From assembly GCF_032191835.1 (NCBI RefSeq), contig NC_083239.1, positions 372,001 through 436,000 of the forward strand: a stretch of DNA of 64,000 nt. Direction: 5' to 3'. The position numbers were made by a program, and so were the translations under genes. Below the pieces are notes generated by a model that did no database searches, was not told the origin of the DNA, and worked only from the letters and a program-made list of their open reading frames with translations. This stretch comes from Heteronotia binoei. Lineage: Eukaryota. Position 1 is the first letter of the stretch. Each line of letters begins with the position of its first letter. Shown here in pieces: positions 1,011 through 63,100 of this stretch.

Positions 1011-1147
1011 CAGGGGTGGCCAACAGTATCTCTCCAGAAGTTTTTTTGCCTACAACTCCCATCAGCCCCAGCCATTGGCCATGCTGACTGGGGCTGATGG
1101 GAGTTGTAGGCAAAAAACGTCTGGAGAGCTACTGTTGGCCAGCCCTG
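1011..1147. mobile_element. Palindromic hAT-type MITE, family B
   Basis: Near-complete fold-back, 8-bp TSD ttatagtg (1003-1010 / 1148-1155). Confidence 0.9.
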
Positions 1148-1234
1148 TTATAGTGGGATGGAAAATAAACATGGAACACCTATTGTGCAGTATAGGGTTC
1201 TGCAGTAAATGCCAGCACCATTCATCAGCTCTTT

Positions 1235-5744: not shown

Positions 5745-6508
5745 CCTATCTTGGGCTCAGCCACCTGGCTCCCAGCAGCTGTAGTGACTCCTGCTCACCT
5801 CACCTGGCTCAGGGGCCACTCTCTATTTGGCCCTCCTGGGAGGGACAGTAGTTCTGGGGCCCGATGCTGGACTTTTGCCCAGCATCTCAGGATCATGACT
5901 GCTCCTGTGTTTAAGCAGTCCTGTAATCAGCTGGTCTTCAGATTTAAAACTGAAGCAGGAAAAGCCCACACAAAAGCAGCTGCCCCAAGCAACTACAACA
6001 CTCCCAGTAAAAAGCCCAGGGATCCCGTGAGCAGCTTTACCAGCCAACTCACATGGGGAGCCAAGTGCAATTGCTGTCTCTGCAGGAGGGTGCGATTGGA
6101 CCATCCAAACGTGTAACCTGCTTTATTGATTCTATGCTAGTTTCGGGTTCACAATCCGTGGCCACAAGCCTTACTAGAGAATTCCTCTTCACAATAAGAC
6201 AGCAGGACTGTAATAAAAATGGACTGTAAATATTGATGCTGTCGCCAGTCAGTATGCTGTCTGTAATGTGATTGCAAGAGTTTGTTGAGAGCCAGATTTG
6301 TCTGCAAAGGGGAGCCTGCCTTTTACCCCTCCCGCCATTGTCATCTGCCAGAAGCCACAGATAGGCCCCTTGCTGCCCAAGCTTGCAAGGGGCCTCTAAT
6401 CTGCAAGTAGGGTGTTTGTCCAACTGCAAAATGCTATGTCTTTCCTGCATGGCTTCTCTTTGGTCAGTTTGTGCAACTGCAGACATGCAAGAATATGGGA
6501 ATTGGAAG

Positions 6509-7224
6509 AAACCCCATAGTACACTGACCCCCGTCCCCCTTTTCAGACTTCAGTTAACAGAGAAGGATGATGGGATTATTTATTTATTTGCTTTAAATTT
6601 ATATCCTGCCCTCTCCGCGAATGGACTGTGGATGTAGACCCCACCCTTAAAATACACATACTTGGCGGTGGCAGGGGGATGTTTTGGCCACAGGATTTTG
6701 CAGGGGAGACCCTATGGCCTAGCACCAGTGGTGCGGGTGGTCTGTATGAACTGCAGATGGGCTACACGGCTCAGTGCGGGAAATGCAGACCACGGGTAGC
6801 CTCACCTGGGCGGATCTTTCCATGGGGATCGATGCTGGCCCAGGTGGAGAATGGCTGGGGGCCTGGCCGCTCAGTTACAACCCGAATTACGGCGGGTTTG
6901 TGCTGGGGGCAGGGGTGCTCGCCCTTAGGACAAGGCGGGGTCAAGGGGTGACCCCAGGGCTTGTTCTGTCAGGCATTATCCCTGCCGAGTTTACAGGTTA
7001 ATTGATTTAATAAAGCGGCCCGGTTATAACCCAACACTTGTGTCTGTCTCTTCTTTCGACTGGGGGGGGCAAACCCTATAGTACACTGACCCCCGTCCCC
7101 CTTTTCAGACTTCAGTTAACAGAGAAGGATGATGGGATTATTTATTTATTTGCTTTAAATTTATATCCTGCCCTCTCCGCGAATGGACTGTGGATGTAGA
7201 CCCCACCCTTAAAATACACATACT
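6509..7224. repeat. 154-bp direct duplication (6509-6662 and 7071-7224) bracketing a 408-bp CpG-rich insert (6663-7070)
   Basis: Direct comparison shows one mismatch in 154 bp. The insert has AATAAA at 7009-7014. Confidence 0.9.
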
Positions 7225-7485
7225 GATCTGAAAAACTGCATTAAACGTGTATTTGCCATAAACATTTGAAGGGCTGTCAGTTTGCAGGCAGAAACTCTCT
7301 TCTTGCTTCATATCATGATGGATACTTTTAATGTTTGACTTGATCAAATGGAAACCCTATTCATTTTTGCAATCCTGTCTGTGTGTATTTTGCTAAAGTT
7401 AATGACGAAAAATTGTTTATGTATTTCAGATAACTTAAGTGAGAATTGGGAGTTCAGAGGTCTTTCCTTCTTTCCAAGAAACATT

Positions 7486-7613
7486 ATGGCTGAACCAGAC
7501 TACATAGACGAAGACAATCCAGAGTTAATTAGACCTCAGAAACTAATTAATCCTGTCAAATCATCTCGGAATCATCAAGACCTTCACAGGGAGCTCCGCA
7601 TGAATCAGAAAAG
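7486..7613 (+). CDS. FAM107B: FAM107B, first coding exon of the short isoform ([42 protein letters not shown]+AG)
   Basis: Translation matches the FAM107B/HITS (DUF1151) N-terminus. Acceptor ttccaag ends at 7478, ATG is at 7486, donor is AAG|gtaaga at 7613/7614. Ends in phase 2, which matches the next exon. Confidence 0.96.
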
Positions 7614-7626
7614 GTAAGAAATCAAG

Positions 7627-9123
7627 ACAGTAAACAATTTAATAGATGGCAAAGAAAAATTTCAGAGTTTGTGTGGGTGGGGAAAAAAACAAGAATTAAA
7701 ATGAAAATTTTAACAAATGCAAAAGAGAGAAGGCGGATTTCAATTATCAGACTTAAAATTATATCATGAAGCAGTTTGCTTCGTATAGATAAAAGAATGG
7801 ATAATGTTGTTAAACAAAAAACTCTTAGCGTTGGAAGATCATGGAAATAAATTTGGCTGGCACGCGTATATGTATTATGGGGAAAAAAAGATAGATGGCT
7901 TTTTCTCTCACCATTATATAAGAAGCAGCTTGCTAAATACATGGATGAAATATAAGAAATATGGAGATGAAAGAAAATCGTTATGGATAGTGCCAGCCGA
8001 AGTGATAAAAATAACAGCTGAGACGGGTGAAGAAAAGTGGTTGTCATATAATCAACTATTAAAAATACAAAGTGGCAAAATAGAATTGAAAACTGCTGAA
8101 GAGCTGAATGATAAATATGATTGGTTTCAAATGCAACAAATAAAGAGCTTGGTGGAGAATGACATTAAAACTGAAGGAATAAGAAAAGAGCAAACAGAAA
8201 TGGAAAAAGTTCTGCTTGGAGATAACAAAAAATTAATTTCAAAATTATATAAATTACTTTTAAAATGGTCTATGGAAGATGAAGTAGTGAAATCTCAAAT
8301 GATTAAGTGGGCAATTAATGTAAAGAAATACAGATGGAAACTTGGGAATATTTGTAGAAGAACTCTGTGAAGCTTTCGACGTGTCATAGTATTAAAGAGA
8401 ACTGTTTTAAAATGATGTATAGATGGTATATGACTCCTAAAAAATTGGCAAAGATGAATAATAAGATGCCAGACAGATGTTGGAAATGTAAAAAACTTGA
8501 AGGTTCTTTCTACCATATGTGGTGGACTTGTGAAAGAGCAAAAAAGTATTGGCATATGATTCAACAAGAAATTTCTAGGATCTTGGGATATGAATTTAAG
8601 AAAGTTGCAGAGACTTTTCTGTTGGGATTACAAATGGAAAAATTTCCAAAAGAAGATAGAACTATAATTTGGTACTTGCTTTCAGCGGCTTGGACATTAT
8701 ATGCGCAGTTGTGGAAGCAAGAAAAAATAGCAGAGAAATGGGATTGGATTGTAAAAGTTATGACATGGAGTGAAATGGACAAATTAACAAGAATTTTAAG
8801 AGACTATGATTTAGAAGTTTTTAAGATGGAGTGGAAAAAGTTCAGAAGATATGTAGTAGAAGACGAGTGGAAAATAAAAGGACATTGGACAATTTTTGAT
8901 AATGATTAAGTTTTAGAAAAAAGAAGAATATTAATTTTTGTTTTTATTAGTTAAGGGTACCTTTAAACATTAGTACTTTAAGTAAATAACACTGGCGGAG
9001 TCAAGTAACGGGGGGAGGAGTGGGTAGAAAGTAACATATGGGATAGATAAAAGAAGTTATTAATGATGCAAGAAATATAATTTGTTACCATATGTTACCA
9101 AATAAAAATTTTTTAACATAAAA
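7627..9123 (+). mobile_element. 5'-truncated L1-clade LINE (ORF2 C-terminus and 3' UTR), frameshifted
   Basis: ORFs 7804-8370 and 8367-8909 with the zinc knuckle RCWKC...YHMWWTC, AATAAA at 9101, A-rich end, 20-bp TSD (7607-7626 / 9124-9143). Confidence 0.9.
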
Positions 9124-10031
9124 AGAAAAGGTAGGAAATCAAGGGTAAAATTCTGCAGTTCAGAAACAAATTTAGTTTTCAGCCATGCAGGAACAAGAAA
9201 TTTTTCTTTGATTTCTGCTCACACACAAAGCAGAGTGGAACTGCTTTAATATGAATTCTCTGCTGTATTAACATTGCACACAGTAGACTGTGGGTCTTTT
9301 CAGATTATGTTCCCTTGTTGTTTTTGCAGACTATCTTTTAATGTCTCCTGGTTCTGATCCCTGGTTGGGTGTGTGTATATGAAATACAGTTTGTTCAGAT
9401 GAGTTACATGGATTGTATTTTCAACCAAATCAGTAAAGATGGGGATACAGATGAAGGAAATAATTCTATATTTTATATTCTTATCGGCAGTTACAGATTT
9501 TTGTGGACCCTAGCCAAAAACCTATCTCTGGGCCTCCATTTCTTTGGTGCACAGCCTCTTTCTCCTCTAATCACACCTCTTCCAGTTGACACCTACCCAT
9601 TCACTATATCTTTTGTCCAGATTAGAGGCCTCTGCTCTTAGCTACTACACCATGCTGGCTCTCAAAAATGGTGCATCACAGTATCAAAATTTACATCCTG
9701 TGCTTGATGTGATTCAGTTGACAGGACTGCTAAAGCATTCAGTTGATCTTGGGAGATCTGTGCCCTGAGATAATTCTCAATTTCAGCTTGCTGAAGCTCC
9801 TTTCAACTGATACAATTGAAACAGGAATTGTCAGCAACAGCTGCAAAGCCGCACCTGTATTTTGGAATGTGAGGCTCAGTGAACAAGATATGATGTAGTG
9901 CAAAATCTACAAGGAATCATTCTACAAAGAAGGTTAAATGATAATCCATTTTTGTTTTAAAACCAGATATCCCCATCTATTTATACATGATGAGCAAACT
10001 CTTGTAAATGCACGAAGATTTCACCCCCTCC

Positions 10032-11244
10032 TGTCAAGCATGCGGTTTCAATGATGAAGTGCATGGCTGCCACTGACGGGGGGTTACCGAGAGCTGTTGG
10101 ATGTGGAGCGGGGAGCCCTTTCCAGCGACTCTCCGGGCGTCCAGCATGTGCCACGGGGGAGTGGGTGCTCTCGCCCCTTCTTCAGGTTCTGGAAGTTTAC
10201 TGCTCACTGGAATCTTTTCAGCCATCTGGTTACAAAGTTGCCAGGGCCGTTAAACTTCTGATAGGATCACTTTCAAAATGTCAAGCATGCAGTTTCAATG
10301 ACGAGTCAAGTTTGATACAAAACTACGGGGTTTGCTCAAATAATGTTGCACCTCACTGAACTGTTGAAAATTAGGGGGAAAGGTCCTGACTCCAAGAAAC
10401 CGGGGGCAAAGCTAAATTGGACGCCTAAGTGCCAGGAGGTGTTCACTAAGCTTAAGCGACTGTTCACTAGTGAGCCAGTCCTGAGTCACCCCAATGAACT
10501 AAAGCCCTTCATTGTGCAATGTGACGCTTCCGACGTCGGAGCCATCCTCATGCAGAAAGATGAGGAAGGGAAGCTAAAACCTTGCGCCTACGTTCCCAAG
10601 AGCAGAGAAACTGGTCGGTATGGGATAAAGAGGCTTTTGCCGTAACCTATGCTTTAAAGACCTGGAGGTCCTGGTTAGAAGGCGCCAAGCTGCCATTTGA
10701 AATTTGGACTGACCGCAAGGATTTGGAGGCGCTCACTGGCCGCCGTAAACTCACTGAGAAACAAATTTGGTGGGCGGGGTTTTTCTCTAAATTTGACTTC
10801 GTTTTGAAGCACATTTTGGGAACAAAAAACTTTTTGGCAGATGCCCTTTCGTGCCTTCCCCAGCACAATAGCCAAAAGGAGGAGGTGGTAGATTCCTTGA
10901 TTTCCCCCTCTCAGGTAGCGGCCAAGGTGGGGGCGAGGGATGCGCTCTAACACATAAACTATCATAAATGTCTACATTCTCACAATGTTATCAGTATCTC
11001 GTCCTTACTTTCCCCCAGATGTTTCACACTCCCAGACAGGAATGTATGGGAAGGTGCTGATTACTCTTTCTCAAGTTAGTTTCGTTTCTCACTACTCTAA
11101 TTCACAAGCAATAAAGCAAGAAGGGGGAGGGGGGGAAAGAATAACAGAGTCAACATACCGGGGCACTCCTTGATATTTCACAGACCAGTTTTATGAAGGA
11201 CCCTAAAACAATTAATTCCCAGTGGAATTCTACCATGCTTGACA
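10032..11244 (-). mobile_element. Internally deleted LTR retroelement with an antisense Ty3/Gypsy RT-RNase H fragment (about 10330-10920, + strand) inside its LTR
   Basis: Termini TGTCAAGCATG / CATGCTTGACA, 5-bp TSD cctcc. RNase H motifs FIVQCDASD, DKEAFAV, IWTD, NFLADALS. Same LTR without the insert at 57039-57497. Confidence 0.8.
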
Positions 11245-17680: not shown

Positions 17681-17710
17681 GTTGTTGTTGCTTGTTTTCC
17701 CTCTTGCCAG

Positions 17711-17864
17711 GGGTCTGGCTCCTCAGAATAAACCAGAGCTGCAAAAAGTGATGGAAAGACGGAAACGAGACCAAGTTATCAAACAGCAGAAAGAAGAGGA
17801 GGCACGGAAGAAGAAATCTGATTTGGAAATAGAGCTACTTAAACGGCAGCAGAAATTGGAACAG
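17711..17864 (+). CDS. FAM107B: FAM107B coding exon 2 ([52 protein letters not shown])
   Basis: Polypyrimidine tract and ccag| acceptor at 17710, donor CAG|gtaaga at 17864/17865. Length 154 nt keeps frame. Coiled-coil peptide typical of FAM107B. Confidence 0.96.
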
Positions 17865-18861: not shown

Positions 18862-18978
18862 CTTGAACTTGAAAAACAGAAGATGCAGGAAGAACAAGAG
18901 AATGCACCTGAGTTTGTCAAAGTGAAAGACAACTTGAGGAGGACCACACAAGAATCAGCAGAAGCACAAAACTCCTAG
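18862..18978 (+). CDS. FAM107B: FAM107B last coding exon ([38 protein letters not shown])
   Basis: Acceptor tttgaag| at 18861, PEFVKV..NLRR motif, TAG at 18976-18978. Exon lengths 128+154+117=399 nt give 132 aa plus stop. Confidence 0.95.
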
Positions 18979-21900
18979 AAGAGAAGCTGCTGATAAGACT
19001 TAGAGGTCTTTCCTCTGGGGCTGCCTGGGAGAGGTTTCTTCAGCAAGGTCATCTCACCCAGTTGCTGTGGAGGAAGAGAATCTGCATCTGGGTATAAAAT
19101 GTACTCAATATGAGGTCAGTTTCTGGAGCATGTGTGGACTGCAAGTTTAACTGATACCAATTCGCCAATAATAATACAGGAATCAGCAGATAAATAAGCA
19201 ACGTTGTCAATGGAAAGAGCTCTCCAAAGTGGTGACCAGGAAAACAAATTGGACTTGTTGCTTTGCTTGTTTATTCCTGATCCAAGGCTACTGGGAATCT
19301 CAGGCTAGTGTATATAATGCCCCCCCCTTCTATTTTGTGAAATTCTGCTATGCAGAAAAAAATAAACATTCTGAAACCACTTCTCTTGCATTTGGCCCAG
19401 TTTGGAAATGGGCACCCCATAGTCTTTAATATTATTCTGAATTTCTTGAGACTTGTAGTTGGATGTGTCTTGCCCACTACTAGCACGTGGCCTGGCAGGG
19501 GCCACATCAGCATCACTGTGAGCAAATATGGACAGCGAGAGGTGGGGGGAAGTTCTTGGTCATGTAGCTGCTACAAGATCTCTTCAGTTAGCAGGGTGCA
19601 GAGCTGTGCATTTGAAGGCACACAAATGTATGACCCCTACCTCCACCTTGTGAAGCACCCATACTGCTGTGCATTTGTGCAGCAGCCCCTCCTCTGATTC
19701 TTTGGCTTGCATATTTCCACCAGGATGTGAAGAACTGCATAATTGGTTTTGTGTCCTTTTGAAGGGGATTCTTTGAAGACTGAGCTTCTTGGCAGCAGCT
19801 TCCCCTCCCCTCATTTGACACTGCGCGCTGCTTTTGAAACCAAGCATTTTCAAAAGCAGTTCATGCATAAATACTTACTGTTCAAAAAGGGAAAGGGGGG
19901 GGGGATCTCATTGGGTGTATTCTGATCTATAATATAGCCATTTTAACCATGTCCTTTTTTCTTAAAGTAAAGAACAAAACAGTAGGCATAAAAAATAACA
20001 GTGGACTATGTAAAACCTGTGTAAACCAGTACCTGTCCATGGTTGAGTAGAGATTGGGAATGATAAGAGATTGTTTTAGAAGAACCATCTGTCTGCCCCC
20101 TGGGTGTAAGAAGCTTGATTATGTTCTGGTTTCTCTGTTATTCCATTCAGTAAGACTATCTCTGCATTTCACATACAAAGCTGCAGCTTGTCAAGGGAAA
20201 AAATAGCTCTCTTTTAACACCAGTCTGCTGAAATGGGCTTTCTTAGGAACAAGCCTAAACTTTGGTCTGCCTGTGTTTTACCAGCTAAAACTCTTCCAGT
20301 CAGGTGTGGAAATCTTGAGTGACCTTCCAGTTCTACAGTTCTTTAGTATTCCTATGGCTCCAAGGAGTGCAAATCATGCAATGTGGATCTGGGCCTCCAA
20401 GTGCTTTTTACTGATGTCTCCTCCCCTACCCCCAGTGGTCAGGTGAAAGGTATTTGAGGTGTACATCTTCATCAGTAACTGGGAACAGAATTTGCTTTAC
20501 AAAATGCTCACTTTACAAAATGCAGATTGTGTCCTAAGCAGGATCTGCGCAGTCTTAAGTTAGTTTTACTACATAAGGTCATATGTAAGAGATGGGAATA
20601 AATGTTTCATTTTTTGGTTTCTGGATACACAGATATGGTATATTTCTCAAAATGGATATAACATAGACTTTCAGTACAGATCACCTGACAGCTAGTAATT
20701 GCAGTTTAATTACATGAGCAACATTGGAGGAAGATCAGGTCCATTTTTCTTGTTTTGGAGCATTGAGTAATAATGCCTCCTACTTTGTGTAGCTACATTT
20801 GATTGCAGCATCTCTTTGGTGTTGGCACCAGCAATGAAAGAAGTTGATTTTTTGTCATTGCTGTAAGCAATGGTAATGGGAAAATTTTTTTTTTGAGGCC
20901 AGTCTTGTGATGTACCATTGACTATAGGCAGTCTTCCTTTTGACATGAAGCGTTTCAGGTTGTCCAAGCCCATTTGAGAATACAATCACATGGTATATCC
21001 AAGAAACAATTAACTAAATCTTGCTGGGATTAAATTTATTTATGATTTGAACCCTGACAAACAACTTTGTCATTGACGTGGATTTAGAAAGCAGCATGCA
21101 CACCCAGGAGAGTGAAGGGTTGTTTTTTTTTCACAAAGCCAAAATGTGACTTCACAGTGCCGTCAACACTTATGACAGGTCACTCAACAATGCTGGCTTG
21201 TGCTGCTTTTACAAAGCAGAATCTGAAGTACTGTAGTTTCTTTCTTTCCCTTCCGCTCTCCTGGAGGTTAGAGAGTCTTCTAACGGCAAATGGCTCATTC
21301 TTTCCGTGTACAGAGCAACTGGATTTTGCCACTCACCTTCACCTTAGTCTTTCTTTCTGCAATACATAGAAATATTTAAGAAACACCAGAATAACTTGCC
21401 TTAATGCTTTATATCAACTGCTGTAGTTTCCTTATGCTTCTCTTGCATAATTACCCCTTACATAACTAGGCACACTTCTGGATTCCAAGCCTGCGGCAAA
21501 CTCTGGCTCAGTGAATGTCTTAGGGTGCTCAAAATTTGAGAATGGAGGCCTCATCCTAGCTGTCAGTTTCAAATTAATAGTTTCTGGCCCAAAGTGCTCT
21601 GAAGGGAGCCCATAAATGTCATATGCCCTGAGTGACACCTTTAGCTGAATGCACTATATGACTGGACAGGGTCAGGACAGATGTTTTCTATGACACCCTA
21701 AAAATTGTTTGTAGATACAGCAGGAACTCATTTGCATATTAGGCCTCACCCCCTTTAACCAAGCTAGCAGGAACTCTGTTCCTGTGTGTTCCTGCTCAAA
21801 AAAAGCCTTGGATACAATACATCGTAGTGTCTTGGAGTGGGGCAGCGGGTTAGTGGGAGTCACATTGCTAACTACTTGTACAACGTAGTCATATCTCTGG

Positions 21901-24540: not shown

Positions 24541-24676
24541 CAGGGGTGGCCAACGGTAGCTCTCCAGATGTTTTTTGCCTACAACTCCCATCAGCCCCAG
24601 CCATTGGCCATGCTGGCTGGGGCTGATGGGAGTTGTAGGCAGAAAACATCTGGAGAGCTACCGTTGGCCACCCCTG
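24541..24676. mobile_element. Palindromic hAT MITE family B
   Basis: 8-bp TSD atatatgg, fold-back structure. Confidence 0.92.
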
Positions 24677-32050: not shown

Positions 32051-32058
32051 GTCTAGAT

Positions 32059-32194
32059 CAGGGGTGGCCAACAGTAGCTCTCCAGATGTTTTTTGCCTAC
32101 ACCTCCCATCAACCCCAGCCAGCATGACCAATGGCTGGGGCTGATGGGAGTTGTAGGCAAAAAACATCTGGAGAGCTACTGTTGGCCACCCCTG
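32059..32194. mobile_element. Palindromic hAT MITE family B
   Basis: 8-bp TSD gtctagat. Confidence 0.92.
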
Positions 32195-60170: not shown

Positions 60171-63100
60171 ACTATAACAATATATTGCGAATTAATAAAA
60201 TTGTTTTAAACAGAAAAATATTTAAGTAATTATTAGCAGAAAGGAAAGTATATGAATCACTAGAGACTACTAATATACAAAAAAGGCTATTATTTTTAAA
60301 ACAAACACACTGGCAGAGGTCACCCAAATTCATTAAAACTTTGGCTTGGAGAGCAAAGAAAAAAACCCTTGATAGGAAAATATACTCTATACGAGATGAC
60401 AAAGGAAAAAGGCAATCCTCTATATTGGACATTGGTTAGTATTTTGCTAAATACTATGAGAGGCTGTATGCTACTACTCTCCACCTGTAGAGGCTATTCA
60501 AAATTTTTTAAATCATCATCCAGTAACAAATAAATTATCATGTTAACACTGTAATTTTATAAATAGACCAATCAATGCAACTGAGATATTGGAGGCAATT
60601 AATCAAACCAAATCCAACACTGCCCCGAGTAGTGATGGGTTCCCCCCGGAATTCTTTAAGCTTTTTAAGTCTAAAATCATTACTACATTTACTAAAGTCT
60701 GTAATTATGTGCTAGATTCAAGTGAAATGCCAGCTTCCTGGAATGAAGCTCAAATAGTTCCACAACCAAAAGAAAACAGGAATTTAGATATACCTTCTTC
60801 ATATAGGCCAATCTCATTGCTGAACTGCGATGCAAAACTTTTTCCTAAGGTTTTAGCAAACAGACTGCAAAAGATCATTCCCAACTACATTAACCCAGAC
60901 CAGATTGGTTTTATACCCCAAAGATCACTAACAGATAACATCCATAGAGTGCTTAATATTATACCACACTGCAAACAACAGCAGGTAAAATTCCTCCTAA
61001 TCTCAATCAACTTATAAAAAGCATTTGACAGTGTGGAACTCCCATACTTGTGCCACCTTTTGAAAGCCATGAATTTTGGACTCAAGTTTTATAATGCCAT
61101 CACCACTATTTATTCGAAACCTCTAGCTAAAATTCAAACAAACAATTTTTAAGTGATTCAATAAGGATTAATAGAGGGACACAGCAGGGGTGTCCGTTGT
61201 CCCCATTGCTCTTTGCTCTGGCGATAGAGCCTTTAGTAGAAGCAATAAGGTTAGATGATAAAATAAGCGGCATAGCAATAGGCGACTCCATCCACAAAGT
61301 TAGTTTGTATGTAGATGATGTGGTGGTATTTTTAACTAATCCAGAAGCCTCAATACCAAATTTGGAATCCCTCTTTGCACAAATTGGTTCAGTCTCTGGC
61401 CTGAAAGTGAATATTAACAAATCCAACATTATACCAATTTGCCTTGAAGCGTCCAATATGTAGGCTTCAAAAAGAAACTAAATATGTCTGGAAAAAATTC
61501 CCCATGGCTTTGTCTTGGAGTACAGATACCCCTGGATCGCAAAGATTTGATTCACTGTAATTTTGACAAATTATACCAGGATACAATTAACCAATTGAAG
61601 CATTGGAACACTGTGGTCTTATCTTGGGCTGATGGAATAAGTCTGTTAAATTTTTTTATTCTTCTTAAATATTTATGTTTATTTCACACAATACCTAGTA
61701 CAATCCCATAGCCATACCTTAGAAAATGGCAACAGTCCTTAAATAATTTTTTGGGGGAGTACAAGTATTACATTCTCTTCTCTTAGACGTATGGCAAATG
61801 GAGGCTTAAATATTTCTGATTTAATTTCATACTATGAGGTAGCAAGATTGGCAGATGTAATTAGACGCTTAACTACACAAAGTATTCCTTCCTGGCAAAC
61901 TATAGAGGACTCAATTGTTAAACCTTTAAACTCTCTGGATTTATTTTGGAGGCAACCTAAATTTTGGCCCCAGTCAATTTTATCTAACCTCTTTCTACCA
62001 GCTTCCTAACAAATTTGGGACTCTAAAAGAAAAAATTTGGTTTCAGAAAACTCTCTTATGACTTCATTCCTTAACCAGCCCTGGTTTTACCCTGGACAGG
62101 ACCCCATAGTTTTCAAGGAATAGAGGGGAAAAGGACTTACATGCATAATTGATTTATCGCATAAAGGTAAATTTATGAATAAACAGGAATTGGAAAGACA
62201 ATACCTTGGTTTCAGTTTTTCGTTACAAAATATGTTACAAAAGCAAAGATTCACAGAACAACAAGAAACCACTATCCCCATTTGGGATGCTCTTAAAAAA
62301 TCAAACAGGGGAAGTTAAGGGTCTGATATAAAAATATATATCAAATGTTACTTGGCTCATCCCAACTAGACAACAAAGTCATCCATAAAGCCTGGGAAAT
62401 GGATCGCAATATTAGAACTAAGGAAACAAATTGGACAGAAATTTACTCTTCCCCAAGCCTTCTTTCACCCATTTTTAATATCAGAGTCAACTCTTTCAAA
62501 TTACTATATAGGTGGCATATCTCTCCTAGCAGGCTAACTAGAATGCATTCCAATGTTAGCCCAAAGTGTTGGAAAAATTGTGGCCAATTTGCAGACTTTA
62601 TACATTGCTGGTGGCTATGCCACAGTATACACCAATTTTGGCTAAAAATTTTGTATCAAATACAGACTATAACTGGAATAATAATCCCTGCTACACCAGA
62701 AATTGCTTTTTTGTATCCTTGGCCCGACTCACCCTGTAATAAGAAGACAAAAACATTTAGCTATTCTGTTGGCAATAGCAAGAATAGTTATTGCATCCAA
62801 ATGGAGGGACGAGAACCCATCTTCACTGCATTTATGGCAAAATAAGCTATGGAATTACTTTTTAATGGGGAAAATTGCAGATAATTTATCTATGCCTAAA
62901 CCAAACTACATCACCTCTTTTCAAACAGTTTGGTTTCCCGTGGTCGAATACCTAAGTGAACTAGATATTATCCCAAAACAAGCCTTTTACTGTATAAGGA
63001 ACTACTATTCTTTTAAACTACTATGGTCACAACTGCTAGGAAAAAATGTATATGGTATTATAATGGTTTATGGTGTGTGATATATGATGTAATTCAGCTT

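What the first reader, a model, noticed from the sequence alone, without database searches (positions are those of the whole stretch)
7607..9143. L1 insertion whose target-site duplication copied the FAM107B exon-intron junction, leaving two 5' splice sites
Seen: agaaaag|gtaagaaatcaag (7607-7626) recurs as agaaaag|gtaggaaatcaag (9124-9143), 19/20 identical, bracketing a 1.5-kb sense L1 with AATAAA at 9101. The TSD starts 7 nt inside the coding exon, so the L1 nicked within the exon and the TSD preserved the donor upstream. The distal donor copy differs at +4 (GTAGGA against GTAAGA), away from consensus. Read-through hits a stop at once (AAA AGG TAA). Inference: use of the distal donor would give an NMD-type extended exon, and L1 polyadenylation would give a 43-aa product lacking the coiled coil. 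The +4 change may reflect selection against the competing donor. This is a candidate TE-born post-transcriptional switch.
Basis: partly seen in the sequence, partly recalled or inferred. Interest (0 to 1): 0.72.

Follow-up and report, generated by a model that had tools for sequence, protein, structure and literature searches.

The report
L1 insert that duplicated a splice donor
An old, broken LINE-1 fragment landed at the end of a coding exon of a gecko's FAM107B gene and copied the exon-intron junction, but the only informative RNA shows the original junction spliced normally, so it looks like an ordinary tolerated insertion and not a regulatory switch.

Summary
A 20-nt direct repeat (7607-7626 and 9124-9143, 19/20) brackets a 1,497-nt sense-strand, 5'-truncated, decayed L1 (end of ORF2, 3'UTR, AATAAA at 9101). 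The repeat spans the last 7 nt of the first coding exon of FAM107B and the first 13 nt of the intron, so there are two GT donors. Four other squamate loci lack the insert and continue as the window does without it. All four have A at donor position +4, so the G in the distal copy is derived.

The functional reading is not supported. An assembled RNA contig matches the exon with no mismatch and runs from 7613 into the exon at 17711, so the proximal donor is used. No RNA was seen at the distal donor or just past the L1. However, the raw-read runs gave no reads on the exon either, so distal use is untested.

One change in 20 nt is what neutral decay predicts, because the L1 body differs from its expressed relatives at about 2-6% of sites. 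The change barely alters U1 pairing (-9.5 against -9.2 kcal/mol).

Verdict: a tolerated intronic L1 with a decoy donor, a neat example of a known kind. The scan noted a mirror case at a splice acceptor (SEMA4B) in the same genome.

The parts
7430..7613 (+). FAM107B exon (first coding exon of the short isoform; ATG at 7486; open from 7430 for longer isoforms)
   Evidence: Pfam DUF1151 E 1.6e-11. The 43 residues are 100% identical to Phrynosoma and Hemicordylus FAM107B. An RNA contig covers 7428-7614 with 0 mismatches.
7607..7626 (+). Proximal copy of the target-site duplication: last 7 nt of the exon plus intron +1 to +13. Its donor AAG|GTAAGA is the one in use.
   Evidence: The contig runs from 7613 into the exon at 17711. 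It has the same GTAAGAAA(T) as three outgroups.
7627..9123 (+). 5'-truncated, decayed L1 in sense orientation: ORF2 remnant 7627-8909 (stop 8907-8909), 3'UTR 8910-9117 with AATAAA at 9101-9106, short A-rich tail 9118-9123
   Evidence: ORF2p C-terminal domain hit E 1e-6, weak zf-RVT hit, translations. Reads from other family copies leave the window at 7624 and 9117. A 41%, 8 sense poly(A) hexamers. Absent from four other squamate loci.
9124..9143 (+). Distal copy of the target-site duplication with the decoy donor AAG|GTAGGA. The derived G is at 9134 (+4).
   Evidence: Polarised by outgroups. Zero RNA depth from 9148 to about 9800 in all four runs.
17711..17864 (+). Next FAM107B coding exon, joined to 7613 in RNA
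   Evidence: The loose end of the X1 contig at 7614 reads the start of this exon.

Best explanation
A 5'-truncated L1 copy was inserted by target-primed reverse transcription in the gecko lineage. The bottom strand was nicked 7 nt inside the FAM107B exon, at TTCT/GA between 7606 and 7607. The top strand was nicked 20 nt downstream, in the intron. Filling the staggered cut duplicated the exon-intron junction. The upstream copy kept exon, donor and 13 nt of intron intact, so the result is equivalent to an intronic insertion at +14 and normal splicing continued. The downstream copy is a decoy donor with no usable exon in front of it. Using it would make a 1.7-kb exon with an immediate stop, so it is ignored or nearly so, and it decays neutrally. 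The +4 A>G change is one such neutral hit. Shown: the insertion, its ends, the duplication, the polarity of the change and use of the proximal donor. Inferred: silence of the distal donor, neutrality and age (tens of millions of years).
For: The 20-nt repeat is 19/20 identical, with a chance expectation of 0.01. The insert is L1 ORF2 C-terminus plus 3'UTR. RNA reads from other copies of the family run on into further L1 sequence upstream of 7624 (61-83 reads per run) and into varied A-rich tails after 9117, which marks both ends of the insert. They also show a 3-nt overlap (AAG) at the 5' junction, as in microhomology-mediated joining. Four squamate loci, including Phrynosoma platyrhinos and Hemicordylus capensis, lack the insert. 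Their introns align with the window once the insert and one repeat copy are removed. All have A at +4, and three have GTAAGAAA. An X1 RNA contig (depth 103) matches 7428-7614 with no mismatch and continues into the exon at 17711. The copy is decayed: frame changes, and a stop at 7786-7788 that reads TGG in family reads. It differs from expressed relatives at 35 listed places and up to about 90 places in 1,497 nt. X1 holds about a third of its 31-mers, which implies about 3% divergence. At 2-6% per site, 0.5-1.2 changes are expected in a 20-nt copy. U1 duplex energy is -9.5 (proximal) against -9.2 kcal/mol (distal).
Against: Distal-donor and intronic poly(A) use were not actually tested. The three raw-read runs gave no reads on the exon itself (not expressed there, or removed by the filter for human-like reads), and contigs drop rare isoforms. 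The distal donor is still a good match (7/9 to consensus, the only other such GT in 7613-9200). The insert carries 8 sense poly(A) hexamers, 5.3 per kb against 0.7 per kb in the rest of the intron, so some leakage is plausible. No gecko orthologue could be fetched, so fixation and age are inferred only.
Confidence: 0.72

Rival explanations
1. Constitutive leak: the sense, A-rich L1 with its many poly(A) hexamers and the decoy donor removes a fixed share of FAM107B transcripts through premature polyadenylation or NMD isoforms. This would be a mildly deleterious or neutral attenuator without regulation.
For: 8 sense AATAAA/ATTAAA hexamers in 1.5 kb, 5.3 per kb against 0.7 per kb in the rest of the intron, and 41% A. 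The distal donor is still 7/9 to consensus with U1 pairing of -9.2 kcal/mol. Sense intronic L1s are known to attenuate transcripts in mammals (own knowledge: Perepelitsa-Belancio and Deininger 2003; Han, Szak and Boeke 2004).
Against: No read or contig links the exon to the L1, ends at the L1 tail of this locus, or covers 9148-9800. The full exon-to-exon junction is the form assembled, at depth 103.
Confidence: 0.2
2. One reading: a TE-born regulated switch. Choice between the two donors, or use of the L1 poly(A) site, is controlled and tunes FAM107B output, and the +4 change was selected to weaken the competing donor.
For: The geometry allows it: two donors, an immediate stop after read-through, and AATAAA at 9101. 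The +4 G is derived.
Against: One change in 20 nt equals the neutral expectation. The chance of at least one hit in the 9-nt donor motif at 2-6% divergence is about 0.2-0.4. The change is a wobble that leaves U1 pairing almost unchanged. No RNA evidence for either alternative form. The insert is absent from all other squamates examined, so it serves no conserved function.
Confidence: 0.06
3. Not a target-site duplication: a chance repeat or an assembly artefact places an unrelated L1 next to the exon.
For: None found. The window is a single assembly, and no DNA reads of the junctions were laid.
Against: Chance expectation is 0.01. The repeat sits exactly at both ends of the L1 as defined independently by reads from other copies. 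Removing the insert and one copy restores the sequence seen in outgroups.
Confidence: 0.02

Closest known systems
De novo L1 endonuclease-dependent insertions at or near exon-intron borders in human disease genes (for example NF1: Wimmer et al. 2011, PMC3219598)
   Same: L1-type insertion with a 7-20 bp target-site duplication in or next to an exon end, where splice-site choice is the main consequence.
   Different: All of those insertions changed splicing (exon skipping, cryptic donors). One poly(T) insertion 3 nt upstream of an exon-intron border caused use of a cryptic donor. Here the duplication left the exon, the donor and 13 intron bases intact upstream, and the normal junction is found in RNA.
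Sense-oriented intronic L1 as a transcript attenuator through internal poly(A) signals and A-richness (own knowledge: Perepelitsa-Belancio and Deininger 2003; Han, Szak and Boeke 2004)
   Same: Sense orientation, 41% A, 8 poly(A) hexamers in 1.5 kb.
   Different: Described for mammalian L1. No truncated transcript was observed here, and only the last third of the element is present.
   Same: Same genome, same mechanism, mirror geometry (acceptor instead of donor). Its RNA use was also unresolved.
   Different: There the functional copy must be the downstream one. Here it is the upstream one, and its use is shown by a contig. I did not re-test that note.

Membership tests
L1 (LINE-1) insertion made by target-primed reverse transcription | Insert encodes L1 ORF2 | tested here: met
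   The 180-aa ORF at 8367-8906 matches human L1 ORF2p residues 1094-1253 at E 1e-6. A Cys/His knuckle is in the same stretch. Weak zf-RVT hit, E 0.018.
L1 (LINE-1) insertion made by target-primed reverse transcription | Flanking target-site duplication of about 7-20 bp | tested here: met
   20 nt, 19/20 identical, chance expectation 0.01.
L1 (LINE-1) insertion made by target-primed reverse transcription | 3' end with poly(A) signal and A tail abutting the downstream repeat | tested here: met
   AATAAA at 9101. Family homology ends at 9117. The tail is only 6 nt (9118-9123) and merges with the A-rich start of the repeat. The short tail is the weakest point.
L1 (LINE-1) insertion made by target-primed reverse transcription | First nick at a T-rich/purine site (TTTT/AA-like) on the bottom strand | tested here: inconclusive
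   The bottom strand reads TTCT/GA at 7606/7607. This is a pyrimidine run followed by purines, but not the exact mammalian consensus, and the preference of this reptile L1 is not known to me.
L1 (LINE-1) insertion made by target-primed reverse transcription | Empty site in relatives | tested here: met
   L001, L002, L003 (Phrynosoma) and L004 (Hemicordylus) run from the donor straight into intron homologous to 9144 onward.
Regulated unproductive splicing or alternative 5' splice-site switch | Both donors used in RNA | tested here: inconclusive
   The proximal junction 7613>17711 is seen in a contig. No distal junction is listed and depth is zero after 9148, but the raw runs had no exon reads at all.
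Regulated unproductive splicing or alternative 5' splice-site switch | Sequence constraint or directional selection on the alternative site | tested here: not met
   One derived change in 20 nt against 0.5-1.2 expected neutrally. U1 pairing -9.5 against -9.2 kcal/mol. The site is absent outside the gecko lineage.
Intronic premature polyadenylation at a sense L1 | Transcripts of the host gene ending at the L1 poly(A) site | tested here: inconclusive
   Reads ending at 9117 carry varied tails and flanks (agreement 0.5-0.57) and fixed differences from the window, so they come from other copies. No locus-specific read was seen.

The most novel reading that the evidence does not exclude
In geckos, the duplicated donor and the L1 poly(A) site are used in a tissue- or condition-dependent way to shut off FAM107B. 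The mechanism would be a 43-aa stub or an NMD isoform, making this a lineage-specific, TE-born switch whose decoy donor was tuned by the +4 change.
Probability: 0.05. Interest if true: 0.55.

Novelty: new member of a known kind. Interest (0 to 1): 0.22.

Why it matters
This is a clean natural example of how a retrotransposon can hit an exon end and still be tolerated. The staggered cut regenerates the splice junction on the side that matters. The leftover copy then shows how an unused splice site decays. Together with the mirror case at a splice acceptor noted in the same genome, it suggests such rescued insertions recur and could be counted genome-wide. That count would measure how close to splice sites insertions can survive. 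It changes nothing in current understanding of L1 or of FAM107B.

Tried and rejected
1. Gecko orthologues, to date the insertion. Two word searches found FAM107B in many squamates, birds and mammals, but no protein named for a gecko. One used the natural 89-aa ORF 7348-7614 by reference with words from residues 47-89. The other used a python long isoform, region 198-328.

2. Exact look-ups of the window's own ORFs (7348-7614 and 8367-8906) found nothing on record. P0005 had no DNA. P0004 and P0008 were not on record.

3. RNA from three raw-read runs gave no reads on the exon, so junction counting was impossible. All L1 reads were 95-99% alike with fixed differences, meaning they come from other copies.

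4. A protein search with the L1 ORF gave only 3 short hits, because full-length ORF2 falls outside the length limit.

5. No other copy of this L1 family is in the window.

6. Pfam on the middle ORF (7804-8367) and PDB on the same piece gave nothing meaningful.

Exons were searched apart, by reference. For the outgroup alignment only, a script removed the insert and one repeat copy from the host intron.

8. Primate hits in the lists were not fetched.

9. The big representative search was not used, because the family was not in doubt.

Full report
**What is there**

A FAM107B exon runs from 7430 (acceptor AG at 7428-7429) to 7613. Its ATG is at 7486 and its donor is AAG|GTAAGA. Reading through the donor gives AAA AGG TAA, so a read-through product would have 43 residues. 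The next exon starts at 17711 after AG at 17709-17710 and ends at 17864. Both exons hit Pfam DUF1151, the FAM107 family, at E 1.6e-11 and 1.8e-12. The first 43 residues are identical to annotated FAM107B of Phrynosoma platyrhinos and Hemicordylus capensis. The last coding exon starts at 18862 and has its stop at 18976-18978.

**The repeat**

The 20-mer at 7607-7626 recurs at 9124-9143 with one difference, A at 7617 against G at 9134. No other match with up to 3 mismatches exists in the window, and shuffles give 0.01. The repeat covers the last 7 exon bases and intron positions +1 to +13.

**The insert**

Bases 7627-9123 are 41% A and 9% C.
- They translate, across at least two frame changes (near 7730 and near 8350) and one stop (7786-7788), into the last roughly 430 codons of a LINE ORF2. 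The ORF2 stop is at 8907-8909.
- The last ORF (8367-8906) matches the C-terminal domain of human L1 ORF2p, residues 1094-1253 of 1275, at E 1e-6. It also hits zf-RVT weakly.
- A 3'UTR of about 210 nt follows, with AATAAA at 9101.
- The element lies on the same strand as the gene.

**Independent definition of the ends**

Three raw RNA runs with the same species label as X1 (the RNA run whose contig matches the exon exactly), plus X1's own contigs, were laid on 6200-10199. Reads over the insert are almost all 95-99% alike and show the same fixed differences from the window in every run, so they come from other expressed copies of the family.
- At the 5' side, 61-83 reads per run leave the window at 7624 and continue into further L1 sequence. 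At the 3' side they leave at 9117 and continue into varied A-rich tails and flanks (agreement 0.5-0.57).
- The element's ends therefore coincide with the repeat. The tail of this copy is only 6 nt (9118-9123).
- The three bases 7624-7626 (AAG) belong to both L1 and target. This short microhomology is usual at 5'-truncated L1 junctions (own knowledge).
- The stop at 7786-7788 reads TGG in the family reads (7787 A>G in nearly all reads), so it is decay of this copy.

**Empty sites and polarity**

No gecko orthologue could be fetched (see the last section), but four other squamate loci were.
- They are two unnamed contigs (L001, L002), Phrynosoma platyrhinos (L003) and Hemicordylus capensis (L004).
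- All four run from the conserved exon end straight into intron. L001 and L002 align with the window sequence that follows 9143.
- Three have GTAAGAAA and one has GTGAGC, so all have A at +4.
- The insertion is therefore specific to the gecko side. The proximal copy keeps the ancestral donor, and the G at 9134 arose in the distal copy after insertion.

**Mechanism of insertion (inferred from the geometry)**

The bottom strand was nicked between 7606 and 7607, where it reads TTCT/GA. That is 7 nt inside the exon. The top strand was cut 20 nt downstream. Fill-in duplicated the junction. The end product is the same as an insertion at intron position +14.

**Is the distal change selected?**

The data give no reason to think so.
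- The insert differs from its expressed relatives at 35 places in the listed part of the table. The upper bound is about 90 places in 1,497 nt (run X5 has 97 places in all, a few of them outside the insert).
- X1 holds 0.34 of the 213 sampled words. After allowing for the exon, that is about a third of the insert's 31-mers, which implies roughly 3% divergence (my arithmetic).
- At 2-6% per site, a 20-nt copy is expected to carry 0.5-1.2 changes. The chance of at least one hit in the nine donor positions is about 0.2-0.4.
- The change turns an A-U pair with U1 into a G-U wobble. Duplex energy with the U1 5' end is -9.5 kcal/mol for the proximal site and -9.2 for the distal one. The consensus match is 8/9 against 7/9.

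**RNA evidence**

- A 621-nt contig of run X1 (depth 103) covers 7428-7614 without a mismatch. Beyond 7614 it reads the start of the exon at 17711, so the proximal donor is used.
- No listed joint, loose end or contig links the exon to the insert or uses 9130. Depth is zero from 9148 to about 9800 in all four runs.
- This absence is weak evidence. The three raw runs show no reads on the exon itself (7406-7539), either because the gene is silent in those samples or because the tool drops reads that resemble human DNA. Contigs also drop rare forms.
- Distal-donor use and L1 polyadenylation therefore remain untested.
- The insert carries 8 sense poly(A) hexamers, 5.3 per kb against 0.7 per kb in the rest of the intron. 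Some constitutive leak is therefore plausible, as known for sense L1s in mammalian introns (own knowledge).

**Comparison with what is known**

L1 and Alu insertions at exon ends are well known from disease genes. In NF1 every such insertion disturbed splicing, including a poly(T) insertion 3 nt upstream of an exon-intron border (PMC3219598). The present case is the tolerated counterpart, because the duplication restored the junction on the exon side. The scan had already noted the mirror case at a splice acceptor of SEMA4B in the same gecko genome (s1-335886). I did not re-test that note. I file this as a new member of a known kind.

**Verdict**

The selection and switch parts are unsupported. 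My probabilities are:

| Reading | Probability |
|---|---|
| Neutral, tolerated insertion with a silent or nearly silent decoy donor | 0.72 |
| Constitutive leak | 0.20 |
| Regulated switch | 0.06 |
| Artefact | 0.02 |

**Side observation: a probable circular RNA**

- The same X1 contig starts with 28 nt that equal window 19085-19112. This lies in the 3'UTR of the last coding exon, just before GAG|GTCAGT.
- The three exon pieces 7430-7613, 17711-17864 and 18862-19114 sum to 591 nt. Adding 30 gives 621, exactly the contig length expected for a circular path assembled with 31-mers. That k is 31 is my own knowledge of the Logan assemblies.
- No exon 31-mer is repeated in the window.
- This points to a circular RNA made by back-splicing 19114>7430, which carries the whole short ORF.
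- FAM107B is listed as a host gene of circular RNAs in chicken and human surveys.
- It rests on one contig only.

**What led nowhere**

- No gecko-named FAM107B appeared in two protein searches.
- Exact look-ups of the window's ORFs and of three listed proteins gave no DNA.
- The L1 ORF search was limited by the length rule.
- No second copy of the family is in the window.

Noticed in passing
window 7430-7613, 17711-17864, 18862-19114: Probable FAM107B circular RNA. An X1 RNA contig of 621 nt joins 19114 (donor GAG|GTCAGT in the 3'UTR) back to the acceptor at 7430. The three exon pieces sum to 591 nt, and 591+30 equals the contig length, as for a circular 31-mer path. Circular RNAs from FAM107B are listed in chicken and human surveys.
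   Followed up: partly
window 1011-1153 against 32053-32194 and 24541-24676: Copies of a short element about 140 nt long match in both orientations (89-92%). They lie in the intron upstream of 7430 and downstream of 19114. Such inverted pairs could favour the back-splice.
   Followed up: no
window 6736-7003: An RNA-covered stretch upstream of the exon in all four runs. It has fixed differences and many loose ends at 6851-6860 (40 reads in X6), so the reads probably come from a repeated or spliced element elsewhere.
   Followed up: no
window 7627-9123 (family, not this copy): The L1 family of the insert is strongly represented in RNA. Contig word depth reaches about 9,000 in X1, and raw reads fall in both mate orientations in X5-X7. 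Some reads show internal deletions or rearranged joints, for example 8842 back to 8700.
   Followed up: no
window 62432-62677: A distant L1-like ORF2 remnant, 32% identical at protein level to 8343-8588 of the insert, so a different LINE lineage.
   Followed up: no
L003 2293-2391: The Phrynosoma FAM107B intron has an assembly gap (run of N) about 165 nt after the donor. It was left as is.
   Followed up: no
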